Assembly: GCA_950097015.1 (NCBI GenBank)
Contig: CATNEN010000002.1
Coordinates: 4,898,001-4,962,000, forward strand
DNA from: Macrostomum hystrix
Taxonomy: Eukaryota; Animalia; Platyhelminthes
DNA length: 64,000 nt
Reading direction: 5' to 3'
The translations under genes were made by a program, and so were the position numbers. Below are positions 1,996-13,281 of the stretch, piece by piece. Position 1 is the first letter of the stretch. Each line of letters starts with the position of its first letter. Below the pieces are notes generated by a model. The model searched no databases. It was given only the letters and a program-made list of their open reading frames with translations, and was not told where the DNA came from.

Positions 1996-2041
1996 AATGT
2001 GCCACCATTTCACTGCATCCATGCTGATTTTTAACTTGCAG

Positions 2042-5000
2042 ATGCATCACCAGCAGTCATCGGATCATCATGCGGTGGCTGCGTCGGCCTTCAACGCCGC
2101 AGCAGCCGCTGTCGGTGATGCGTGGCCTCGCGGCAAAGCCAGCTACAGCATGGACAAGCTGCTTGGCACTGGCGCCACCTCCAAGGTGTACAGGGCCACT
2201 TGTCCGTCGCGCAACAATGCCGAGATTGCTATCAAAGTTGTCAACTTGGACAGTAGCTCTGTGTCCATGGACGAGTTGCATCGGGAGACTCAGGGCATGA
2301 AGAAGCTGCGGCATGAGAACATTGTGGCCTACTATGGCAGCTTCATTGAGGACCAGTTCCTGTTCATCCTCATGGACCTGTGCGAGCGATCACTTCTGGA
2401 TGTCATCAACCGGACAAAGACTAGCAGGGATATTCTACACGGGGTATTCGATGAAAACACCATTGCAACCATTGTCAGAGAGGTGCTGAAGGGCCTGCAG
2501 TATATTCACGAGAATGGCCTGGTGCACAGGTTAGTTTTGTTTGACTGTCCGTTTGAGTCTGTTTCTGCTGTCATTTTGAGTCAGTTTTGACTGTCAGTTT
2601 GAGTCATACTCATAATTAGACTCAAACAAAACCAAGCATACTTAACGCCCTCCAGAGACATCAAGTGCGGCAACATTCTGTTGAAGAAGGACGGTTCAGT
2701 TCAGATCGCTGACTTTGGTGTGACAGCATTCATCAATACTAATCCGCTGACTGGTCTGTCTGTTAATCCCGTGTCCAGGCACACCTTTGTTGGCACTCCC
2801 TGTTGGATGGCTCCAGAGGTGAGCGGCTGTGACTTTAGGGAATAAGCAATAGGTGTATGTGTATGGAAAGATTTGTTTCTTAAGAATGATCCCGCAAGAC
2901 GAATGAGAAGTACATTTGAAGGCCAGAACCGTACCTGTTCCGTCTATAATCCGAAATCCTCAAGGTCATGGAGCAGCGACAGTACGGCTACACAACCAAG
3001 GCGGACATCTGGAGCCTGGGCATCACAGCCCTGGAGCTGGTGACTGGCAGCGCGCCCTACGCCAAGTTCGCGCCGCTGAAAGTCATCATCCTGACGCTGA
3101 ACAATGACCCGCCGAGTCTGGCCACGGTGGAAGAGAAACCCGGCCAGTACTCCGCCTACGGGCAGAAGTTTAGAAAGTTTGTAGCCGCCTGTCTGGTGCG
3201 GAATGACGCCGAGAGACCCGGCGCTAAGCAACTGCTGCTGCACCCGTTTATCAAGGTGAGCAGCCCCGTGCCTAAGCATGTTCTAAAGTACACTCGCTTC
3301 AAACTCCCCTAGACTAGAACCCGCCAGCACAACTAATGTACACTCGCTTCAAACTCCCCTAGACTAGAACCCGCCAGCCCAACTAATGTACACTCGCTTC
3401 AATTTCCCCTAGACTAGAACCCGCCAGCCCAACTAATGTACACTCGCTTCAATTTCCCCTAGACTAGAACCCGCCAGCCCAACTAATGTACACTCGCTTC
3501 AAACTCCCCTAGACTAGAACCCGCCAGCTCAACTAATGTACACTCGCTTCAAACTCCCCTAGACTAGAACCCGCCAGCCCAACTAATGTACACTCGCTTC
3601 AAACTCCCCTAGACTAGAACCCGCCAGCACAACTAATGTACACTCGCTTCAAACTCCCCTAGACTAGAACCCGCCAGCCCAACTAATGTACACTCGCTTC
3701 AATTTCCCCTAGACTAGAACCCGCCAGCCCAAATAAAGTACACTCGCTTCAAACTCCCCTAGACTAGAACCCGCCAGCCCAACTAATGTACACTCGCTTC
3801 AATTTCCCCTAGACTAGAACCCGCCAGCCCAACTAATGTACACTCGCTTCAAACTCCCCTAGACTAGAACCCGCCAGCTCAACTAATGTACACTCGCTTC
3901 AAACTCCCCTAGACTAGAACCCGCCAGCCCAACTAATGTACACTCGCTTCAAACTCCCCTAGACTAGAACCCGCCAGCCCAACTAATGTACACTCGCTTC
4001 AAACTCCCCTAGACTAGAACCCGCCAGCCCAACTAATGTACACTCGCTTCAAACTCCCCTAGACTAGAACCCGCCAGCCCAACTAATGTACACTCGCTTC
4101 AAACTCCCATAGACTAGAACCCGCCAGCCCAACTAATGTACACTCGCTTCAAACTCCCATAGACTAGAACCCGCCAGCCCAACTAATGTACACTCGCTTC
4201 AAACTCCCCTAGACTAGAATCCGCCAGCCCAATGTAAACTCGCTTCAAACTGTTCAACACTACAGGCCAAAGCCAAAGAGAAAGAGTACATCGTTCGATT
4301 TCTGCTCAGCGGTGACTCGCAGCTGCTGCAGCAGCACCAGAACCTGCTGTCCGGCAAGCGCCGGTCTCAGGACGATGTCTTAAGTGGCGGCGACGGCGGA
4401 GAAAACGCCGGCGAAGATGAAGAAGACGAGGAGGAGGAGGACGAGTGGCAGTTTCCCGATGGGGGCTCCGCGGCTGCGGCCTCCACTACTGCCACCTCCG
4501 CAGCTGCCACTGCCAGCGACGCTAAAATACCCACAATAAAACTGCCAGCCACCGCGACCTCATCCTCAGCCGCGCCTACGGACGACGACTCCGTGATGGT
4601 GATCGATCAGGACAACCCCGACAGTCGGTTGCCATGGCTACGCGCCGCCCTAGCGACGCGCTCTAATTGTCGCAGCGTCAGTTTAAAATTCCGGCTTCGA
4701 AAGCGCAAAGACGAAGCGTCGGTCTCTCCGGACATCTCTGCCTCCTTCACGCCTTCAGCAGCTTCAATGTCAACTGGCGCGTTGACTAATTTTGCTGACG
4801 ATTCGTCGATGCAAGCTTCGTCGGCCACCTCACCGTTATCTGCGGCCGCGGACGGAACGTCTGTCTCAACGGGATCCGCCTTGGCCGAGCTGCAGGACAT
4901 CACATTCGACTTTGCTGTTGGCAAAGACAAAGCCAACGGCATCACCATGGAGCTAGTGGAGTCCGGTCTAGTCAGCATGCACGACATGGTGGTAATCTCC

Positions 5001-5195
5001 CGAGCCCTGCAGACCCTCATCGATGCGCCCTGGGCTCGCGAGCGGGTCTTCCCGCTGAACACCCCGCTGCCACCGGGTGTCTTCGCCGACCAGGTCGAGT
5101 TTGTCGGCTACGCCGGACTGTCTGTCGTGTCCGTGACCGCCCAATTCGAGGACGGCAGTGAGGAGTCGCTGCAGCTTGAAGAGGCCGCTGCCTAG
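2042..5195 (+). CDS. OXSR1: STE20-family Ser/Thr kinase, OSR1/SPAK (fray) type; join(2042..2529,2656..2818,2965..3255,4266..5195), 623 aa
   Basis: Kinase motifs [14 protein letters not shown]|[23 protein letters not shown] and [11 protein letters not shown]-terminal CCT/PF2-like segment (SLKFRLRK...[27 protein letters not shown]...FVGYAGLSV). All three introns are GT-AG with matching phases. ATG directly follows ttgcag. OXSR1 versus STK39 orthology cannot be resolved. Confidence 0.92.
3285..4250 (+). repeat. 50-bp minisatellite (~19 copies) filling kinase intron 3
   Basis: Unit AATGTACACTCGCTTCAAACTCCCCTAGACTAGAACCCGCCAGCCCAACT, near-perfect copies. Confidence 0.97.
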
Positions 5196-5859
5196 GTTGG
5201 CGGATTGCGAGACTCGGCTATCGTCACGTGACTTTGATTTTCGACCGAGTTAAGTTTTTGTGGGAAAGTTTGATATACATCTTGCTAACAGCAATCGGTA
5301 CATTGACCCATCAACCCATGCATTGATCCACTGACCCATACGTTGACCGACTGACCCATGCATTGACCCTTTGTCTTTGGCCCACTGACTCATTAATTAA
5401 ACTAATCTATTGACCCAGTGTAGAAGAATTGTGTTAATATTTTATACTTTTAATTGGAACTAACATATTATTCCAAGTTTTTTACTTGCTGACTGAACCA
5501 CCTTTATTCAGATTAGATTCAACACGCAAATGGTTTTCTATAGTTGTATGTAATTTTATAATTCATTAGATTTGTTATACTTTGATTCTTCAATCACTCC
5601 ACTAGTAAAAATATGTTTTGGTCAGTTTTCTTGCTTAGTTGCTTGTGACATTATTAGCTTTTATTTCCTGTCGTGATTATTGCGTAGGAAATTTAATTTT
5701 ATCAGTCAATTTTTCCCATGGCTGAGTTCTAGTTGTAATCGAGTTTTGATTAAGAATTTCTCACAAATTTTACTATTTACTTTACTCGACATAACTGCCA
5801 GTTGAAAAGTCATTATTTAAATTAATTACTGCCGCCTCTAGCTATCTAGTCTCAGAATT

Positions 5860-6400
5860 CTTCAACCCGAATGTACATTCTCTCCAGGTCATCCCTAGTA
5901 TTACTACTTCAATGTACATTATCTCCAGGCCAGCGTCAAGATTCCTCAACCCCAATGTACATTCTGTCCAGGCCAGCCCCGAGATTCCTCAACCCCAATG
6001 TACATTCTCTCCAGGTCAGCGCTAGTATTACTACTTCAATGTACATTATCTCCAGGCCAGCGTCAAGATTCCTCAACCCCAATGTACATTCTGTCCAGGC
6101 CAGCCCCGAGATTCCTCAACCCCAATGTACATTCTGTCCAGGCCAGCCCCGAGATTCCTCAACCCCAATGTACATTCTCTCCAGGTCAGCGCTAGTATTA
6201 CTACTTCAATGTACATTATCTCCAGGCCAGCGTCAAGATTCCTCAACCCCAATGTACATTCTGTCCAGGCCAGCCCTGAGATTCCTCAACCCCAATGTAC
6301 ATTCTCTCCAGGTCAGCGCTAGTATTACTACTTCAATGTACATTATCTCCAGGCCAGCGTCAAGATTCCTCAACCCCAATGTACATTCTCTCCAGGCCAA
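5860..6400 (+). repeat. Higher-order minisatellite: ~42-bp AATGTACATT..CCAGG subunits combined into a ~127-bp period
   Basis: Three alternating subunit types. ORFs at 5871, 5998 and 6125 are offset by 127 bp. Confidence 0.9.
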
Positions 6401-7424
6401 CCTCAGAATCTCCACCACCCCTATTTCCTCCGCTTTCCAGACCAAGCAAATGTACATATAACCCAGAAAAAACTCAGAGGCCGCCCCATTGTGCATAGCT
6501 GTAGATTGTCATCATAGCTGTCAATCATTATTTGTGCACAATTTCCCATCGTCCCCTGCACTATTAGTCTGTACATATTTAGACGTACAATCTAGCCATT
6601 TGATATTTTGTGACATTTTCTCCAATATCTCGCTCTGTTTGATAGCAGTGAATCAATAATGCTACTAACCAGTGTCTTTTAGTATTAAGTTTGTAAATAA
6701 CATATTTTCGAAAGCCTTTTTATTAATTTTCTAATTCATGTCACTTTTTTCTGCTTGCGTGTTGCTTTGTTATAATAACATAGACTGAGGTTTATAAAAC
6801 CTCACATTCTTGCTTGCACATTCTAATCGATTATTTTAACAGTGTTCACTTTTGACCTGTTATGCTGCAGGTAACTGCAGGTATTAACAGCGAGCTGGTC
6901 AATGTGACTCTTACATTTGCATATTTAAACTACTTACTGCCTTATTCAGTAAGTAGTATCATTTTTTTTGTTTTGCTAATTATGTTAAAAAGATATGATT
7001 CTACAAAAAGGTTTTTTGTATTAAAAATGTTTTATTTTACTATTGTGGAATAAATTAACATATGTTCAAAAAAAGTTTCCTGTAGCAAAAAGTTTTTAAG
7101 ATTAAAGTATTAGAGCAAGGTGGATATAAAGTTTTGTAGGTCATTTTTGGAACAGATTCTACTACTAAAATAGATTTCTTTTTCTTTTGGTTTAGATTAA
7201 TTAATTATTACAGATAATTAATTCAGCTAGTCGATACCGGTTTTGTTCCTTTTTATTTTGAAATAAAATAAGTCTCATTGCTTAGACATTGCTTAGAGCT
7301 TGTAAACCTTGTAATTTAGTGTTTTGCCCTATATTTGGGTTCGCGACTCGAACTCCCGACCCTCGGTCAGAAGTCCGCAGCTCTAGTCAGCTTTTTATCT
7401 TGATCCAAAAAATGATAATGATAA

Positions 7425-7680
7425 TAATAGTTACAGGACGGCTGCGGGCAATGGCACATCATTTGGTGACACCGCAGCCAGCGAGGAGGCAATTCTGTCA
7501 ATTTCGCTGATTCTTAAGCACACACGCACACAGATACTGTACGCAGGCACACGCTAACACAGGTGTGTACATCTGCCTGACTTTCTCATCGTCAGGCAGT
7601 GTACACTCTCACTGTGCTTAGCAGATTGGCCTTCAAGGGCGTAAATTGCACGACAAGCCCCCTTAAGCCTTGTGACCCAT
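7425..7680 (-). mobile_element. SINE family A (tRNA-derived), partial copy
   Basis: Same body as copies at 14.8, 18.2, 26.9 and 33.7 kb (gcagccagcgaggaggc...gtgtacac...caagggcgtaaattgcacgacaagcccc). Confidence 0.8.
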
Positions 7681-7761
7681 TTTTCCTAGGTTCATAAAGT
7701 TCTACTATCAGTAGTGCTCCCAGCATCTGCGTGTGAAGCTTGGCCAATCCTGCTCTTACAG

Positions 7762-8182
7762 GACCTAATCTTCCTGGGCACGGCGAGCTCGTTTCCTTCG
7801 CCGCATCGCTGCGCCTCCGGTTTGATTGTTCGTTTCCATAGCAACGGCGAGTGCTGGCTATTCGACTGCGGCGAGTCCACCCAGGTCCAGCTGATGCGCT
7901 CTCCGGTGCGCATGGGCAGAATCTCGCGCATCTTCATCACTCACCTGCACGGAGATCACAGTTTCGGCCTGCCCGGCCTCATCAGCACCCTTGGCGGCGG
8001 CCGCTGCGAGGACGGCTCGACCGTGACTGTCTACGGACCGCCCGGCACCCGGCAGTTTCTCAGGCAGAGCCTAGCCTATGCCAGGAGCGACCTGGTTGGG
8101 GTGAGTGAGCTGTGCTCCGCTGCCACTGCCTGTTTCTGACTGCCTGCCTGACTGCCTGCCTGCCTGCCTGCCTGCCTGCTTG

Positions 8183-8220
<38 letters not shown>

Positions 8221-8315
8221 TGCCTGCCTGCCTGTCTGTCTGTCTGCCTGACTGTCTGCCTGACTGTCTGCCTGTCTGCCTGCCTGCCTGACTGCCTGCC
8301 TGCCTGCCTGCCTGA

Positions 8316-8346
<31 letters not shown>

Positions 8347-8348
8347 CT

Positions 8349-8380
<32 letters not shown>

Positions 8381-8606
8381 TGTCTGTCTGCCTGACTGCC
8401 TGCCTGACTGCCTGCCTGACTGCCTGCCTGCCTGCCTGCCTGCCTGTCTGTCTGTCTGTCTGCCTGACTGTCTGCCTGTCTGCCTGCCTGCCTGCCTGCC
8501 TGCCTGTCTGTCTGTCTGTCTGTCTGCCTGACTGTCTGCCTGTCTGCCTGCCTGCCTGCCTGCCTGCCTGTCTGTCTGTCTGTCTGTCTGCCTGACTGTC
8601 TGCTTG

Positions 8607-8662
<56 letters not shown>

Positions 8663-8666
8663 CTTG

Positions 8667-8724
<58 letters not shown>

Positions 8725-8890
8725 TGTCTGTCTGCCTGACTGTCTGCCTGACTGTCTGCCTGTCTGCCTGCCTGCCTGCCTGCCTGCCTGTCTGTCTGTC
8801 TGTCTGTCTGCCTGACTGTCTGCCTGTCTGCCTGCCTGCCTGCCTGCCTGCCTGTCTGTCTGTCTGTCTGTCTGCCTGACTGTCTGCTTG

Positions 8891-8946
<56 letters not shown>

Positions 8947-8950
8947 CTTG

Positions 8951-9004
<54 letters not shown>

Positions 9005-9386
9005 TGTCTGTCTGCCTGACTGTCTGCCTGACTGTCTGCCTGTCTGCCTGCCTGCCTGCCTGCCTGCCTGTCTGTCTGTCTGTCTGTCTGCCTGACTGTC
9101 TGCCTGTCTGCCTGCCTGCCTGCCTGCCTGCCTGTCTGTCTGTCTGTCTGTCTGCCTGACTGTCTGACTGCCTGCCTGCCTGCCTGTCTGTCTGTCTGTC
9201 TGTCTGCCTGACTGTCTGACTGCCTGACTGTCTGCCTGACTGCCTGCCTGTCTGTCTGCCTGACTGTCTGCCTGACTGCCTGCCTGCCTGTCTGTCTGTC
9301 TGCCTGCCTGCCTGCCTGTCTGTTCTGGTTGTCTGTATGTCTGTCTGTCTGTCTGTTCTGGTTGTCTCTCTGTCTGTCCTGGGTGG

Positions 9387-9450
<64 letters not shown>

Positions 9451-9530
9451 TCTGGTTGTCTGTATGTCTGTCTGTCTGTCTGTTCTGGTTGTCTCTCTGT
9501 CTGTCCTGGGTGTCTCTCTGTCTGATCGGG

Positions 9531-9562
<32 letters not shown>

Positions 9563-11227
9563 ATTAATTATATTAAGAAGTTAGTGAAGCTGTTGTCAGC
9601 ACAGACGTGCACTTCTGTGCGGACAATACACAGGTAATCAGATAGATAATAAGCACGGTTGTACATCTGCTTCAGTTTTTCATTGCAAGGCACAGACCTT
9701 GGTGCGATAGTCGAATGAGTGAATTGCTGTCTCTCTGTTTTATTTTCACTGAATCTGTCTATTTTGTATCTGCATTCATCCTCCGATTCTTGTCCCCTTA
9801 GATGCGCTTAGCGATTCGCGAGCTTCAAGACGTTCCACTGCTGATGCCGGCGCCCGAAAATGCTAAAATGGAGGCCATCCTTGCCAGGGCGGTCAGCTCG
9901 AGTGCCGGCCTGTTGCCGTCACTGCCCTACGAGACTGTCATCTCGGACTCCGTCCGTGAGCCGGACGGCACCTGGACTGTTGTATCGGCAGGGGAATCCG
10001 ACAGCAGCTGCGGAGTCACCGTGCGGGCCGCCGCATTAAGCCACCGGGTGCCCTGCGTTGGCTACCGACTCGAGACTCGAGCACCCGCCATTGGCCACCT
10101 GCTGCCTGAGCTGGCCTATGAGCTGGGATTGGCCAGGACTGGCGAGACCGCCCTGCTGGGCGAGCTCAAACGCGGCCGGACGGTCACAACTGCCTCCGGA
10201 GCTGTCATTCGACCTGACCAGGTGAGACTCAGATTGAGTAGGCGTGAGAACGGGATTTGGTAGAGTTGCGTAGAATATAATGTGAGATGGGGTAGAAATA
10301 GAATGGGGGTGAGATCGGGTATATTAGGGTATAATAGGTTGAGATGGGGTAGGATAGGAGGGTGAGATGGGGTAGAATAGGAGGATGAGATGGGGTAGGA
10401 TAGGAGAATGAGATGGGATAGAATAGGAGAATGAGATGGGATAGAATAGGAGGCTGAGATGGGGTAGACTAGGAGGCTGAGATAGGGTAGGATAGGAGGC
10501 TGAGATGGGGTAGGATAGGAGGTTGAGATAGGGTAGAATGAGAGGGTGAGATGGGGTAGAATGAGAGGGTGAGATGGGGTAGAATGAGAGGGTGAGATAG
10601 GGTAGAATGAGAGGGTGAGATGGGGTAGAATGAGAGGGTGAGATAGGGTAGAATGAGAGGGTGAGATGGGGTAGAATGAGATGGTGAGATAGGGTAGAAT
10701 GAGAGGGTGAGATAGGGTAGAAAGGTTCTTATAGCAAGGCTTTTTATATTTGCTAGCAAACAGGCTCGAAAAATTGCATAAATCCTTTCAATTTCCATTT
10801 AAAACTGCTCGGGCCGCAGGTGACCTCACCACCGCCTCCGCCACTGCGTCTGGCCGTCTTCGGCGACACCTGTAAATCGGACCTGGCCGCCAACTTGTGC
10901 CGCAATGTCGACTGCCTGGTGCATGAGGCTACGGGCGACGACTCGCTGACTGACATCTGTCACGAGAAGGGGCACTCCACCCCTGCCATGGCCGCTGAGT
11001 ATGCCCGTCAAATTGGTGCAAAATCCCTGCTGCTGACTCACTTCAGCCAGCGCTACACCGAACAGTCGGGACCCTCAGCCAGCGACGCCTCCGTGGAGCT
11101 GTTGCGTCGGCAGGCCGCAGCCAGACTGGAGGGCTGCGGGATCTCCTTGAACATGGCGGCTGACCTGAGGCAGTTCTCTCTGACTCACGATGGACTCAAG
11201 TTTGTTAAGGACCACAACTGCGATTAG
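7762..11227 (+). CDS. ELAC1: Ribonuclease Z, short form; join(7762..8100,9802..10221,10820..11227); initiator Met not encoded locally
   Basis: DLIFLGTASSFPSPHR, WLFDCGE, motif II HLHGDH, SHRVPCVGY, GDT, HEAT, HST and THFSQRY. Phase-0 GT-AG introns. First exon opens at ttacag|GAC with no in-frame ATG back to the TAG at 7687. AATAAA near 11392. Confidence 0.92.
8135..9562 (+). repeat. Compound (CTGC)n/(CTGT)n tetranucleotide microsatellite, ~1.4 kb, ELAC1 intron 1
   Basis: Directly visible. Source of the spurious 497-aa QAGR/QTDR ORF. Confidence 0.98.
10280..10722 (+). repeat. Purine-rich ~23-bp tandem repeat (GAGATGGGGTAGAATGAGAGGGT), ELAC1 intron 2
   Basis: Directly visible periodicity. Confidence 0.9.
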
Positions 11228-11559
11228 GGAACCTGCTCAGGGACCTGAAGTTTTTGAGTACACACCTACTGAATGGCCCGATGATAATAAATGGAAGCAA
11301 ATATACTAGCTATATGGATAACGGCTCGCACATGTTTATTGTTTTCTTTCATGAATATTATTTGCATGCAAGCTTAAGCCAAAGCCTATCTAATAAACGT
11401 TGAAGCATTTCACTTTGCGTATCAACATGAATATTTGATCAAATTGAACCATTTAATCTTTTCTTTTGTGTAAATGATTTAAAACAAGTTTTAAAAAATA
11501 CATGCATTAGCTCACGAGATGTTTTTTCAGCTGAGTTTTGCTTTCATTTGCCAACTTTA

Positions 11560-12797
11560 ATGTACACACGCTTTCACTCACCAATCTCACCTACTCCAGT
11601 GTACACTCGCTCTCCACCAATCACACCTACTCCAGTTTACACTCGCTCCCTAACCAATCACACCTACTCCAGTGTACACTCGCTCTCCACCAATCACACC
11701 TACTCCAGTTTACACTCGCTCCCTAACCAATCACACCTACTCCAGTGTACACTCGCTCTCCACCAATCACACCTACTCCAGTTTACACTCGCTCCCTAAC
11801 CAATCACACCTACTCCAGTTTACACTTGCTCTCCACCAATCACACCTACTCCAGTTTACACTTGCTCTCCACCAATCACACCTACTCCAGTTTACACTCG
11901 CTCCCTAACCAATCACACCTACTCCAGTGTACACTCGCTCTCCACCAATCACACCTACTCCAGTTTACACTCGCTCCCTAACCAATCACACCTACTCCAG
12001 TTTACACTTGCTCTCCACCAATCACACCTACTCCAGTGTACACTCGCTCCCTAACCAATCACACCTACTCCAGTGTACACTCGCTCCCTAGCCAATCACA
12101 CCTACTCCAGTATACACTCGCTCCCTAACCAATCACACCTACTCCAGTATACACTCGCTCCCTAACCAATCACACCTACTCCAGTGTACACTCGCTCTCC
12201 ACCAATCACACCTACTCCAGTATACACTCGCTCCCTAACCAATCACACCTACTCCAGTTTACACTTGCTCTCCACCAATCACACCTACTCCAGTGTACAC
12301 TCGCTCCCTAACCAATCACACCTACTCCAGTGTACACTCGCTCCCTAGCCAATCACACCTACTCCAGTATACACTCGCTCCCTAACCAATCACACCTACT
12401 CCAGTATACACTCGCTCCCTAACCAATCACACCTACTCCAGTATACACTCGCTCCCTAACCAATCACACCTACTCCAGTATACACTCGCTCCCTAACCAA
12501 TCACACCTACTCCAGTGTACACTCGCTCCCTAACCAATCACACCTACCCCAGTGTACACTCGCTCCCTAACCAATCACACCTACTCCAGTATACACTCGC
12601 TCCCTAACCAATCACACCTACTCCAGTGTACACTCGCTCCCTAACCAATCACACCTACCCCAGTGTACACTCGCTCCCTAACCAATCACACCTACTCCAG
12701 TGTACACTCGCTCCCTAACCAATCACACCTACTCCAGTGTACACTCGCTCCCTAACCAATCACACCTATTCCAGTGTACACTCGCTCCCTAACCAAT
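11560..12797 (+). repeat. 36/37-bp minisatellite (CAGTGTACACTCGCTCCCTAACCAATCACACCTACTC), ~33 copies
   Basis: Directly visible. Lies between ELAC1 and YPEL5. Confidence 0.97.
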
Positions 12798-12924
12798 CTC
12801 GAGTTCTCTCATGCACAACATACTCCGGGCCAATCATCATGCAGTTCTGATATGCGCAATGTTTCAGCATCTGGGCCTGTAGAGCGTGCAGCCAGGTTCG
12901 CACTCGAGAATCGCTAATTGCGCA

Positions 12925-13281
12925 ATGGGCCGACTGCACATTGTACACATGGGCGGCGAGCGGGTGTTCTCCTGCGCCAACTGCGACTGCCCACTGACCA
13001 ATCGGCAGCAGCTAGTCAGCACCCGCTTCACCGGAGCCACCGGGCGGGCCTTCCTATTTAACCGGGTGGTAAACCTGGACATGAGCGAGCTGCAAGACCG
13101 GGTTATGCTCACCGGTAGGCACATGGTTCGCGACGTGAGCTGCCGCAAGTGCAAGACTAAACTGGGCTGGGTGTACGAGTTTGCCACAGAGGAGAGCCAG
13201 CAGTACAAGGAAGGAAAAATCATTCTGGAGCGGGCTCTGATTAACGAGAGCGAAGGGTTTACCGATCCGGTCAAAGACTGA
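12925..13281 (+). CDS. YPEL5: Yippee-like protein, YPEL5 type, 118 aa, single coding exon
   Basis: [20 protein letters not shown]...[19 protein letters not shown]...[29 protein letters not shown]...[12 protein letters not shown], with two CxxC zinc pairs. True ATG is at 12925, not the ORF-track start. Confidence 0.95.

What the first reader, a model, noticed from the sequence alone, without database searches (positions are those of the whole stretch)
7687..7790. RNase Z gene has no start codon: initiator Met probably donated by the spliced leader's 3' AUG
Seen: the conserved N-terminal strand DLIFLGT begins exactly at ctcttacag|GAC (7762), and there is no in-frame ATG back to the TAG at 7687 (the ORF track had to use GTG). 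Known: ELAC1/RNase Z proteins begin roughly M-x-x-x-FLGT, and flatworm spliced leaders end in AUG, reported to act as initiator in Schistosoma. Inference: SL-AUG + GAC gives MDLIFLGT, so translation would depend on trans-splicing.
Basis: partly seen in the sequence, partly recalled or inferred. Interest (0 to 1): 0.75.

Follow-up and report, generated by a model that had tools for sequence, protein, structure and literature searches.

The report
RNase Z start codon from spliced leader
In the flatworm Macrostomum hystrix, an intact tRNA-trimming enzyme gene (RNase Z/ELAC1) has no start codon of its own and almost certainly takes it from the AUG at the end of the trans-spliced leader; this is a well-supported new example of a habit already known in flatworms.

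Summary
The coding sequence of a short-form RNase Z (ELAC1) gene starts at 7762, directly after the acceptor ctcttacag. There is no in-frame ATG back to the TAG at 7687-7689. Homology to human ELAC1 begins at that Asp, which is residue 2 of ELAC1.

The window comes from the published M. hystrix assembly. The spliced-leader genes of that genome end ...TTGCATG|GTAAG, so leader plus exon reads AUG-GAC, giving M-D-L-I-F-L-G-T.

I could not reach any M. hystrix RNA contig for this gene, so the junction is not shown directly. The indirect evidence is strong:
- Three RNA-seq-based M. lignano gene models of the ortholog, and one of an old paralog, are 5'-partial and begin at the equivalent AG| boundary.
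- Between the two species, DNA similarity upstream of the gene starts at the acceptor.
- The 43 codons tested ahead of the first genomic in-frame ATG (codon 45) have dN/dS of 0.09.
- The M. hystrix paralog has the same ATG-less layout.
- Upstream cis-exon candidates occur at chance frequency.

The mechanism is known (Cheng et al. 2006, Schistosoma). Earlier notes from this scan report the same thing for at least nine other genes of this genome. Verdict: a new member of a known kind, of low to moderate interest.

The parts
7687..7689 (+). In-frame TAG that closes the reading frame upstream of exon 1
   Evidence: The 24 in-frame codons between this stop and 7762 contain no ATG.
7408..7671 (+). 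Copy of a dispersed repeat of about 260 bp (SINE/MITE-like), lying in the presumed outron about 90 bp upstream of the acceptor
   Evidence: The first look gave more than 1400 candidates in the genome. The 40 that were scored match at 87-91% identity, on both strands.
7745..7761 (+). Pyrimidine-rich tract and 3' splice acceptor (ctcttacag), the proposed trans-splice acceptor
   Evidence: TTACAG fits the published M. lignano trans-splice acceptor motif [T/C]TNCAG. The M. lignano ortholog has ctgcag at the same place.
7762..8100 (+). Coding exon 1 of RNase Z/ELAC1: 113 codons, starting with Asp = residue 2, ending in phase 0 before the donor GTGAGT. It contains motif I (LFDCGE) and the HLHGDH zinc motif.
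   Evidence: It is 90% identical to residues 1-113 of M. lignano PAA73292.1. dN/dS is 0.094.
7894..7896 (+). First genomic in-frame ATG (codon 45 of exon 1). Starting translation here would delete the first strands and motif I.
   Evidence: with the alignment.
8101..9801 (+). Intron 1 (phase 0), mostly a (CTGC)n / 12-nt microsatellite
9802..10221 (+). Coding exon 2: 140 codons, acceptor cccttag, donor GTGAGA
   Evidence: It is 77% identical to M. lignano residues 114-255. dN/dS is 0.118.
10222..10819 (+). Intron 2 (phase 0), containing a 23-nt tandem array at 10331-10722
10820..11227 (+). Coding exon 3: 135 codons plus the TAG stop at 11225-11227. It carries the VHEAT, GHSTP and THFSQRY motifs.
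   Evidence: It aligns to ELAC1 residues 245-342 (E 5.8e-15). dN/dS is 0.18.
11286..11397 (+). Candidate poly(A) signals (AATAAA at 11286 and 11392) downstream of the stop
   Evidence: These are sequence matches only.
6862..6870 (+). Judged a chance match.
   Evidence: It is not conserved in M. lignano. There are 47 phase-0 ATG..|GT candidates in 5196-7761, against 34 +/- 10 in shuffles.

Best explanation
This is an intact three-exon gene for a short-form RNase Z (ELAC1-type tRNA 3' endonuclease) of Macrostomum hystrix. Its genomic copy starts at codon 2.

Proposed mechanism:
1. The pre-mRNA is trans-spliced at the acceptor 7761|7762 to the 45-nt Macrostomum spliced leader.
2. The last three bases of that leader are AUG, and this is the only AUG in the leader.
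3. The mature mRNA therefore reads ...UUGCAUG|GACCUAAUC. The leader's AUG lies about 42 nt from the cap and is the first AUG a scanning ribosome meets.
4. That AUG opens the frame M-D-L-I-F-L-G-T, the canonical RNase Z N-terminus.
5. Without trans-splicing the full-length enzyme cannot be made.

Shown here: the missing ATG, the acceptor, the leader's terminal ATG, the intact and selected coding sequence, and orthologous and paralogous M. lignano gene models that begin at the same boundary.

Inferred: that the leader is joined at this site in M. hystrix, and that translation starts at the leader's AUG.
For: - **Missing ATG.** There is no in-frame ATG between the TAG at 7687 and 7762, and the first genomic ATG is codon 45.
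- **Homology boundary.** Homology to ELAC1 and RNase Z starts at the Asp at 7762, which is residue 2 of human ELAC1.
- **Species.** G000 has 220,453,370 bp in 42 contigs, matching the published M. hystrix assembly.
- **Leader sequence.** Nineteen exact copies of CTCAATTTATTGCATG|GTAAG occur in the genome. The SL exon at L002:1506-1550(-) has a single ATG, at its 3' end. The RNA-derived M. hystrix SL in the genome paper's supplement also ends in ATG.
- **M. lignano ortholog models.** Proteins PAA73292.1, PAA79801.1 and PAA88114.1 come from the RNA-seq and SL-read-guided Mlig_3_7 annotation. All are 'partial' and begin DLIFLGT. The CDS of PAA73292.1 starts at L010:5001, right after ctgcag, although the frame stays open upstream and holds an in-frame ATG 24 codons up. 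The transcript model therefore starts at the acceptor.
- **Synteny.** The order OSR1-type kinase, RNase Z, Yippee is shared by both species.
- **Similarity boundary.** The only significant blastn block between the two species' upstream regions starts at window 7759, the cag before GAC.
- **Paralog.** In M. hystrix (L008 and L009) it has ctgcag|GAGCTGGTC with no in-frame ATG. Its M. lignano ortholog PAA-type model P0179 starts DLVFLGT at ttcaag|GAT, with an in-frame TGA two codons upstream.
- **Selection.** dN/dS against M. lignano is 0.092 for codons 1-43 (dS 0.81), the same as for the rest of exon 1.
- **Known mechanism.** The mechanism is published for flatworms: Cheng et al. 2006, as cited in PMC9851317 and PMC12582326.
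Against: - No M. hystrix RNA contig or read for this gene could be reached. Three protein word searches, one collection scan and one exact look-up were blank. The leader-exon junction is therefore inferred for this species.
- The M. lignano evidence is an annotation, not reads that I inspected.
- The leader's AUG has a U at -3, a weak context that is only partly offset by G at +4.
- A short, non-conserved cis exon ending in phase 0 cannot be excluded from sequence alone.
Confidence: 0.83

Rival explanations
1. An unrecognised upstream cis exon, ending in phase 0 and containing the ATG, is spliced to 7762. One candidate is 6862-6870 (ATGCTGCAG|GTAACT); another is 6862-6948, which ends before GTAAGT. 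Under this reading the start codon is genomic and trans-splicing is not needed.
For: The region 5196-7761 contains 47 phase-0 ATG...|GT candidates. One of them (6862-6948) has a consensus GT[AG]AG donor. No RNA data for this species were reachable to exclude it.
Against: The candidate counts equal chance: 34 +/- 10 overall, and 0.77 +/- 1.03 with a consensus donor. No upstream block is conserved with M. lignano. Four M. lignano gene models (three ortholog copies and the paralog) start at the acceptor with no 5' exon. In M. lignano a 25-nt tandem array reaches to within about 20 nt of the acceptor. In M. hystrix a dispersed repeat sits 90 bp upstream of the acceptor.
Confidence: 0.08
2. Translation does not use the leader's AUG. 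Instead it starts at the internal Met45 (7894), giving an N-truncated protein, or at a non-AUG codon (GTG 7714 or CTG 7750) on an unspliced transcript.
For: The leader's AUG has a pyrimidine at -3, so some leaky scanning is plausible. The next AUG in the mRNA is in frame.
Against: Codons 1-43 are as strongly constrained as the rest of the exon (dN/dS 0.092). They encode the first strands and motif I (LFDCGE), which align to solved RNase Z structures. The stretch 7690-7761 is not conserved with M. lignano at the DNA or the protein level.
Confidence: 0.05
3. The locus is a decaying or non-functional copy that lost its start codon.
For: The genomic ATG is missing. Both introns are filled with long simple repeats.
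Against: All 388 codons are open, and the splice sites are canonical and all in phase 0. The catalytic motifs are intact. dN/dS is 0.09-0.18 with dS of about 0.7-1.4. The same ATG-less layout is kept in two species and two paralogs.
Confidence: 0.02

Closest known systems
Schistosoma mansoni mRNAs that use the spliced leader's 3'-terminal AUG as initiator (Cheng, Cohen, Ndegwa & Davis 2006, J Biol Chem 281:733; cited in PMC9851317 and PMC12582326)
   Same: The leader ends in AUG. The acceptor lies in frame at the start of the conserved coding region. There is no genomic start codon, so translation of the full protein depends on trans-splicing.
   Different: The species is free-living and early-branching (Macrostomorpha), and the gene is different (RNase Z/ELAC1). 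Use of the AUG was shown experimentally in schistosomes. Here it is inferred from sequence, from comparison between species and from the M. lignano annotation.
slORFs: open reading frames created by spliced-leader addition (slORFfinder, PMC9851317)
   Same: The start codon is supplied by the leader, and annotation pipelines miss it or call the protein 'partial'.
   Different: Most slORFs in that study rest on non-AUG codons in nematode, ascidian or trypanosome leaders, and many are alternative frames. Here a true AUG restores the canonical N-terminus of a conserved enzyme.
Human ELAC1 (PDB 3zwf) and bacterial RNase Z (1y44, 2cbn)
   Same: The N-terminus matches (M-D/E-x-x-F-L-G-T). Motif I, the HxHxDH motif and the C-terminal HEAT/HST-type motifs are present. 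The length is similar, at about 389 residues.
   Different: The middle part (exon 2, the flexible-arm region) is too diverged to match on its own. In this gene the initiator Met is not encoded in the gene.
Other M. hystrix genes that this scan reported to borrow the SL AUG (SIRT6, NDUFA5, cardiolipin synthase, SFMBT, PPP2R3C, a RabGAP, an SSB-like gene, URB1, UBE4A)
   Same: Same genome, same leader and same AG|codon-2 layout.
   Different: Those notes report RNA assemblies that show the junction. For RNase Z no RNA contig could be reached, but here the layout is shown to be shared by two paralogs and two species.

Membership tests
RNase Z short form / ELAC1 (metallo-beta-lactamase-fold tRNA 3' endonuclease) | HxHxDH zinc-binding motif (motif II) | tested here: met
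   Exon 1 encodes T-H-L-H-G-D-H-S, aligned to the same motif of ELAC1 and RNase Z. Pfam Lactamase_B scores E 1e-08 and Lactamase_B_2 scores E 4.9e-08.
RNase Z short form / ELAC1 (metallo-beta-lactamase-fold tRNA 3' endonuclease) | N-terminal strand F-L-G-T and motif I (F-D-C-G-E) directly after Met1 | tested here: met
   The phmmer alignment to 3zwf_A residues 2-113 has E 2.1e-33 and starts at the Asp at 7762.
RNase Z short form / ELAC1 (metallo-beta-lactamase-fold tRNA 3' endonuclease) | C-terminal catalytic motifs (HEAT-like, HST-like, final His motif) | tested here: met
   Exon 3 encodes VHEAT, GHSTP and THFSQRY, and aligns to ELAC1 residues 245-342 at E 5.8e-15.
RNase Z short form / ELAC1 (metallo-beta-lactamase-fold tRNA 3' endonuclease) | Flexible arm (exosite) for tRNA binding in the middle of the protein | tested here: inconclusive
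   Exon 2 alone has no Pfam or PDB match. However, the full-length M. lignano ortholog aligns over 94-97% of its length to animal ELAC1 proteins at 37-41% identity.
Flatworm mRNAs initiated at the spliced leader's terminal AUG | The species' spliced leader ends in AUG immediately before the GU donor | tested here: met
   There are 19 exact genomic copies of ...TTGCATG|GTAAG. The SL exon is at L002:1506-1550(-). The published RNA-derived M. hystrix SL ends in ATG.
Flatworm mRNAs initiated at the spliced leader's terminal AUG | The first coding exon begins at a 3' acceptor in phase with the SL AUG, with no in-frame genomic ATG upstream | tested here: met
   The acceptor TTACAG fits the published trans-splice motif.
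Flatworm mRNAs initiated at the spliced leader's terminal AUG | The leader is physically joined to this acceptor in mature mRNA | tested here: inconclusive
   No M. hystrix RNA contig was reachable. Indirect support: four RNA-seq-based M. lignano models (three ortholog copies and the paralog) start at the equivalent AG| boundary.
Flatworm mRNAs initiated at the spliced leader's terminal AUG | Translation starts at the SL AUG | not testable with these tools
   Indirect only. Codons 1-43 are under purifying selection (dN/dS 0.092), and the SL AUG would be the only AUG upstream of them in the mature mRNA.
Downstream gene of a Macrostomum operon (polycistron resolved by SL trans-splicing) | A same-strand upstream gene at a repeat-adjusted distance below about 1 kb (criterion of PMC8629364) | tested here: inconclusive
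   The OSR1-type kinase gene on the same strand stops at 5195, which is 2566 bp upstream, or about 1.7 kb after subtracting the repeats found. The kinase's poly(A) site is unknown. AATAAA at 7049 and 7262 could bring the gap under 1 kb.

The most novel reading that the evidence does not exclude
Dependence on the leader's AUG may be old and stable for this enzyme family. Both Macrostomum ELAC1 paralogs are about 59% identical and sit in different, conserved neighbourhoods. Both place a splice acceptor exactly before codon 2, in M. hystrix and in M. lignano. The start codon was therefore probably already missing before the paralogs duplicated and before the species split. Together with the other cases noted in this genome, this would mean that a sizeable set of Macrostomum housekeeping genes is obligately dependent on trans-splicing for translation. 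That dependence could be a point of coordinated control.
Probability: 0.5. Interest if true: 0.4.

Novelty: new member of a known kind. Interest (0 to 1): 0.27.

Why it matters
It matters in three practical ways.
- **Annotation.** Genes of this type are called 'partial', given false GTG/TTG or internal-Met starts, or dropped. Here the true protein is Met plus the 388 genomic codons. M. hystrix, M. cliftonense and M. lignano gene sets could be corrected systematically by adding the SL AUG at in-frame trans-splice sites.
- **Biology.** Synthesis of a tRNA 3'-processing enzyme is tied to trans-splicing, and the arrangement has been kept in two paralogs and two species.
- **Testability.** M. lignano has a transgenesis method, so the idea can be tested directly.

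It does not reveal a new mechanism.

Tried and rejected
- **tRNA and Rfam scans of the window.** Nothing was found, so the GC-rich patch upstream of the acceptor is not an RNA gene. It is a dispersed repeat.
- **Search for RNA-derived proteins that would show the junction.** Word searches with exon 1 (113 aa), with its first 50 aa and with the full-length M. lignano protein found no M. hystrix or other Macrostomum transcript products. An exact scan of the metagenome collection for leader-plus-exon was blank. An exact look-up of the neighbouring Yippee protein was blank, and the look-up of P0026 was also blank.
- **Search for a retrocopy of the trans-spliced mRNA in the genome.** There were only two 3-mismatch matches in unrelated places, and I did not inspect them.
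- **Reading the '.g2' suffix of the M. lignano gene name as 'second gene of an operon'.** Rejected. Near-identical copies on different contigs carry g4 and g7 of one prefix, and prefixes come from 95% clustering.
- **The bacterial-type promoter and terminator scan.** It is not informative for a eukaryote.
- **Supplements of PMC8629364.** None are held.
- **The joined, spliced protein model.** I never built or searched one. All searches were made exon by exon by reference, or with database proteins. The dN/dS totals are sums of per-exon codon counts.

Full report
**What is there.**
The window is G000:C2:4898001-4962000 of an assembly with 220,453,370 bases in 42 contigs. These are exactly the figures published for Macrostomum hystrix (Table 1 of PMC10468722). 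At 7762-11227 on the + strand lies a three-exon gene for a short-form RNase Z (ELAC1).

| Exon | Coordinates | Codons | Boundaries |
|---|---|---|---|
| 1 | 7762-8100 | 113 | donor GTGAGT |
| 2 | 9802-10221 | 140 | acceptor cccttag, donor GTGAGA |
| 3 | 10820-11227 | 135 plus TAG | acceptor gccgcag |

Both introns are in phase 0. Exon 1 matches Pfam Lactamase_B and Lactamase_B_2. It also matches human ELAC1 (3zwf, E 2.1e-33) and bacterial RNase Z structures. Exon 3 matches the C-terminal part of ELAC1 (E 5.8e-15). Exon 2 is too diverged to match on its own. The full-length M. lignano ortholog nevertheless aligns over 94-97% of its length to animal ELAC1 proteins. Motif I, HLHGDH, VHEAT, GHSTP and THFSQRY are all present.

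**The observation.**
The sequence reads ...ctgctcttacag|GACCTAATCTTCCTGGGC. From the TAG at 7687-7689 to 7761 there are 24 in-frame codons and none is ATG. The mechanical ORF therefore begins at a GTG. The PDB alignments start at the Asp at 7762, which pairs with residue 2 of human ELAC1 and residue 2-3 of the bacterial enzymes. Close animal homologues begin M-(x-x)-D-[VI]-T-F-L-G-T. The first genomic ATGs in exon 1 are codons 45 and 51, and there is no out-of-frame ATG before them.

**The leader.**
The published M. lignano leader ends ...AATTTATTGCATG (PMC8629364). Its 3' end plus the donor occurs 19 times without mismatch in this genome. Eighteen of these copies lie in arrays spaced mostly about 11.6-11.7 kb apart on contigs C15, C17 and C42, and one lies on C1. 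One copy, read at L002:1506-1550(-), is a 45-nt leader followed by GTAAG. Its only ATG is the terminal one, and it has no in-frame stop. The M. hystrix genome paper assembled the same leader from RNA. [quoted passage not shown] Leader plus exon 1 gives AUG-GAC-CUA-AUC..., that is, M-D-L-I-F-L-G-T.

**Comparative evidence that the mRNA begins at this acceptor.**
An exhaustive HMMER search with exon 1 gave one close hit, P0023, at 91% identity. This is M. lignano PAA73292.1, labelled 'partial', 388 aa, and it begins DLIFLGT. Two further M. lignano copies (PAA79801.1 and PAA88114.1) begin in the same way.

These proteins come from the Mlig_3_7 annotation. In that annotation, transcript 5' ends were set from leader-containing RNA-seq reads and leader-trimmed transcripts, and ORFs were then called by TransDecoder (PMC5730564). 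In the M. lignano locus (L010) the CDS starts at 5001, directly after ccctgcag. The frame stays open for 33 codons upstream and even holds an in-frame ATG 24 codons up, inside a 25-nt tandem array. An ORF caller would have extended the protein if the transcript model reached further upstream, so the model starts at the acceptor.

The neighbouring Yippee gene behaves in the same way. Its 'partial' protein starts one base after tttcag, so that leader plus exon would read AUG-UAA. This shows that such 5'-partial models mark trans-splice sites. The gene order OSR1-type kinase, RNase Z, Yippee is the same in both species. A blastn comparison of the two upstream regions (window 5196-7800 against L010 1399-5040) gives a single significant block. 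It starts at window 7759, the cag in front of GAC.

**A second, older copy tells the same story.**
The genome holds a paralog, 59% identical in exon 1, on C24, with a near-identical copy on C6. It reads ...aacctgcag|GAGCTGGTCTTCCTTGGC, that is, E-L-V-F-L-G-S directly after an acceptor. It has no in-frame ATG, and a same-strand WD40 gene ends about 650 bp upstream. Its M. lignano ortholog (P0179, 'partial') starts DLVFLGT at ttcaag|GAT, with an in-frame TGA two codons upstream, again downstream of a WD40 gene. The AG|codon-2 layout is therefore shared by two paralogs in two species.

**Selection.**
Codon-by-codon comparison with M. lignano was made exon by exon (Nei-Gojobori method).

| Region | dN/dS | dS |
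|---|---|---|
| Exon 1 | 0.094 | 0.69 |
| Exon 2 | 0.118 | 1.40 |
| Exon 3 | 0.18 | 0.85 |
| Exon 1, codons 1-43 | 0.092 | 0.81 |

Codons 1-43 all lie before the first genomic ATG, and they are as constrained as the rest of the exon. They are therefore translated, and the gene is not a pseudogene. Starting at Met45 would remove the first strands and motif I.

**Rivals.**
- **Upstream cis exon.** Shuffled sequence gives 34 +/- 10. Only one candidate has a consensus GT[AG]AG donor, against 0.77 +/- 1.03 in shuffles. None is conserved.
- **What lies upstream.** The 260 bp at 7408-7671, ending 90 bp upstream of the acceptor, are a copy of a dispersed repeat with more than 1400 first-look candidates in the genome. 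The array at 5857-6399 is a tandem repeat.
- **Operon.** Whether the gene is the downstream member of an operon with the kinase is open. The distance from the kinase stop is 2566 bp, or about 1.7 kb without repeats. The published criterion is below 1 kb between transcripts, and the kinase's poly(A) site is unknown.

**What is missing.**
I could not reach any M. hystrix RNA contig for this gene. Three word-based protein searches, one scan of the metagenome collection and exact look-ups were blank, and no retrocopy of the trans-spliced mRNA exists in the genome. All searches were made exon by exon or with database proteins.

**Comparison with what is known.**
Use of the flatworm leader's terminal AUG as initiator was shown for Schistosoma mansoni. 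There the AUG is in frame in 28% of trans-spliced transcripts, and more than 40 cDNAs need it (Cheng et al. 2006, as summarised in PMC9851317, and noted in PMC12582326). The scan's own earlier notes list at least nine other M. hystrix genes with the same layout and report RNA assemblies showing the junction. I did not re-test those notes. In short, the scan has found this phenomenon before on other DNA of this genome.

**Verdict.**
It is a new member of a known kind. The modest extra point is that the ATG-less state is shared by two old paralogs and two species, so it is stable rather than accidental.

Noticed in passing
window 12860-12927; L010 9280-9325: The downstream Yippee gene has its own ATG (12925). 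In M. lignano its annotated transcript starts one base after tttcag, so leader plus exon would read AUG-UAA, a one-codon upstream ORF. In M. hystrix the likely acceptor tgtttcag (12860-12867) would give AUG-CAU-CUG-GGC-CUG-UAG. This would be a case where the leader's AUG must be bypassed or followed by re-initiation.
   Followed up: partly
window 7408-7671: A copy of a dispersed repeat of about 260 bp. The first look gave more than 1400 candidates in the genome, matching at 87-91% identity on both strands. It looks SINE/MITE-like. ARAGORN and Rfam find no RNA gene in it.
   Followed up: partly
window 8135-9562: Intron 1 of the RNase Z gene is almost entirely a (CTGC)n / TCTGCCTGCCTG microsatellite of about 1.4 kb. 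It creates long spurious ORFs on both strands, for example a 497-aa ORF on the minus strand.
   Followed up: no
window 5857-6399, 10331-10722, 11580-12798: Three further tandem arrays (units of 43/127 nt, 23 nt and 37 nt) fill the intergenic spaces and intron 2. The M. lignano locus has unrelated arrays at the corresponding places (25-nt units up to the acceptor, L010 4200-4985).
   Followed up: partly
L008 (G000:C24:6975378-6978707) and L009 (G000:C6:38388-41717): A second ELAC1-type gene, 59% identical in exon 1 and lacking the first intron, lies downstream of a WD40 gene. It is present twice in near-identical form on two contigs, which could be a recent duplication or an uncollapsed haplotype.
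   Followed up: partly
window 1997-5195: Upstream on the same strand is an OSR1/SPAK-type STE20 kinase gene (kinase domain plus an OSR1_C-type C-terminus). The same neighbour is found in M. lignano.
   Followed up: partly
G000 contigs C15, C17, C42: Spliced-leader RNA genes recur mostly about 11.6-11.7 kb apart in tandem arrays. This fits earlier notes of this scan that place them in rDNA spacers. One further exact copy lies on C1 (16047932).
   Followed up: no
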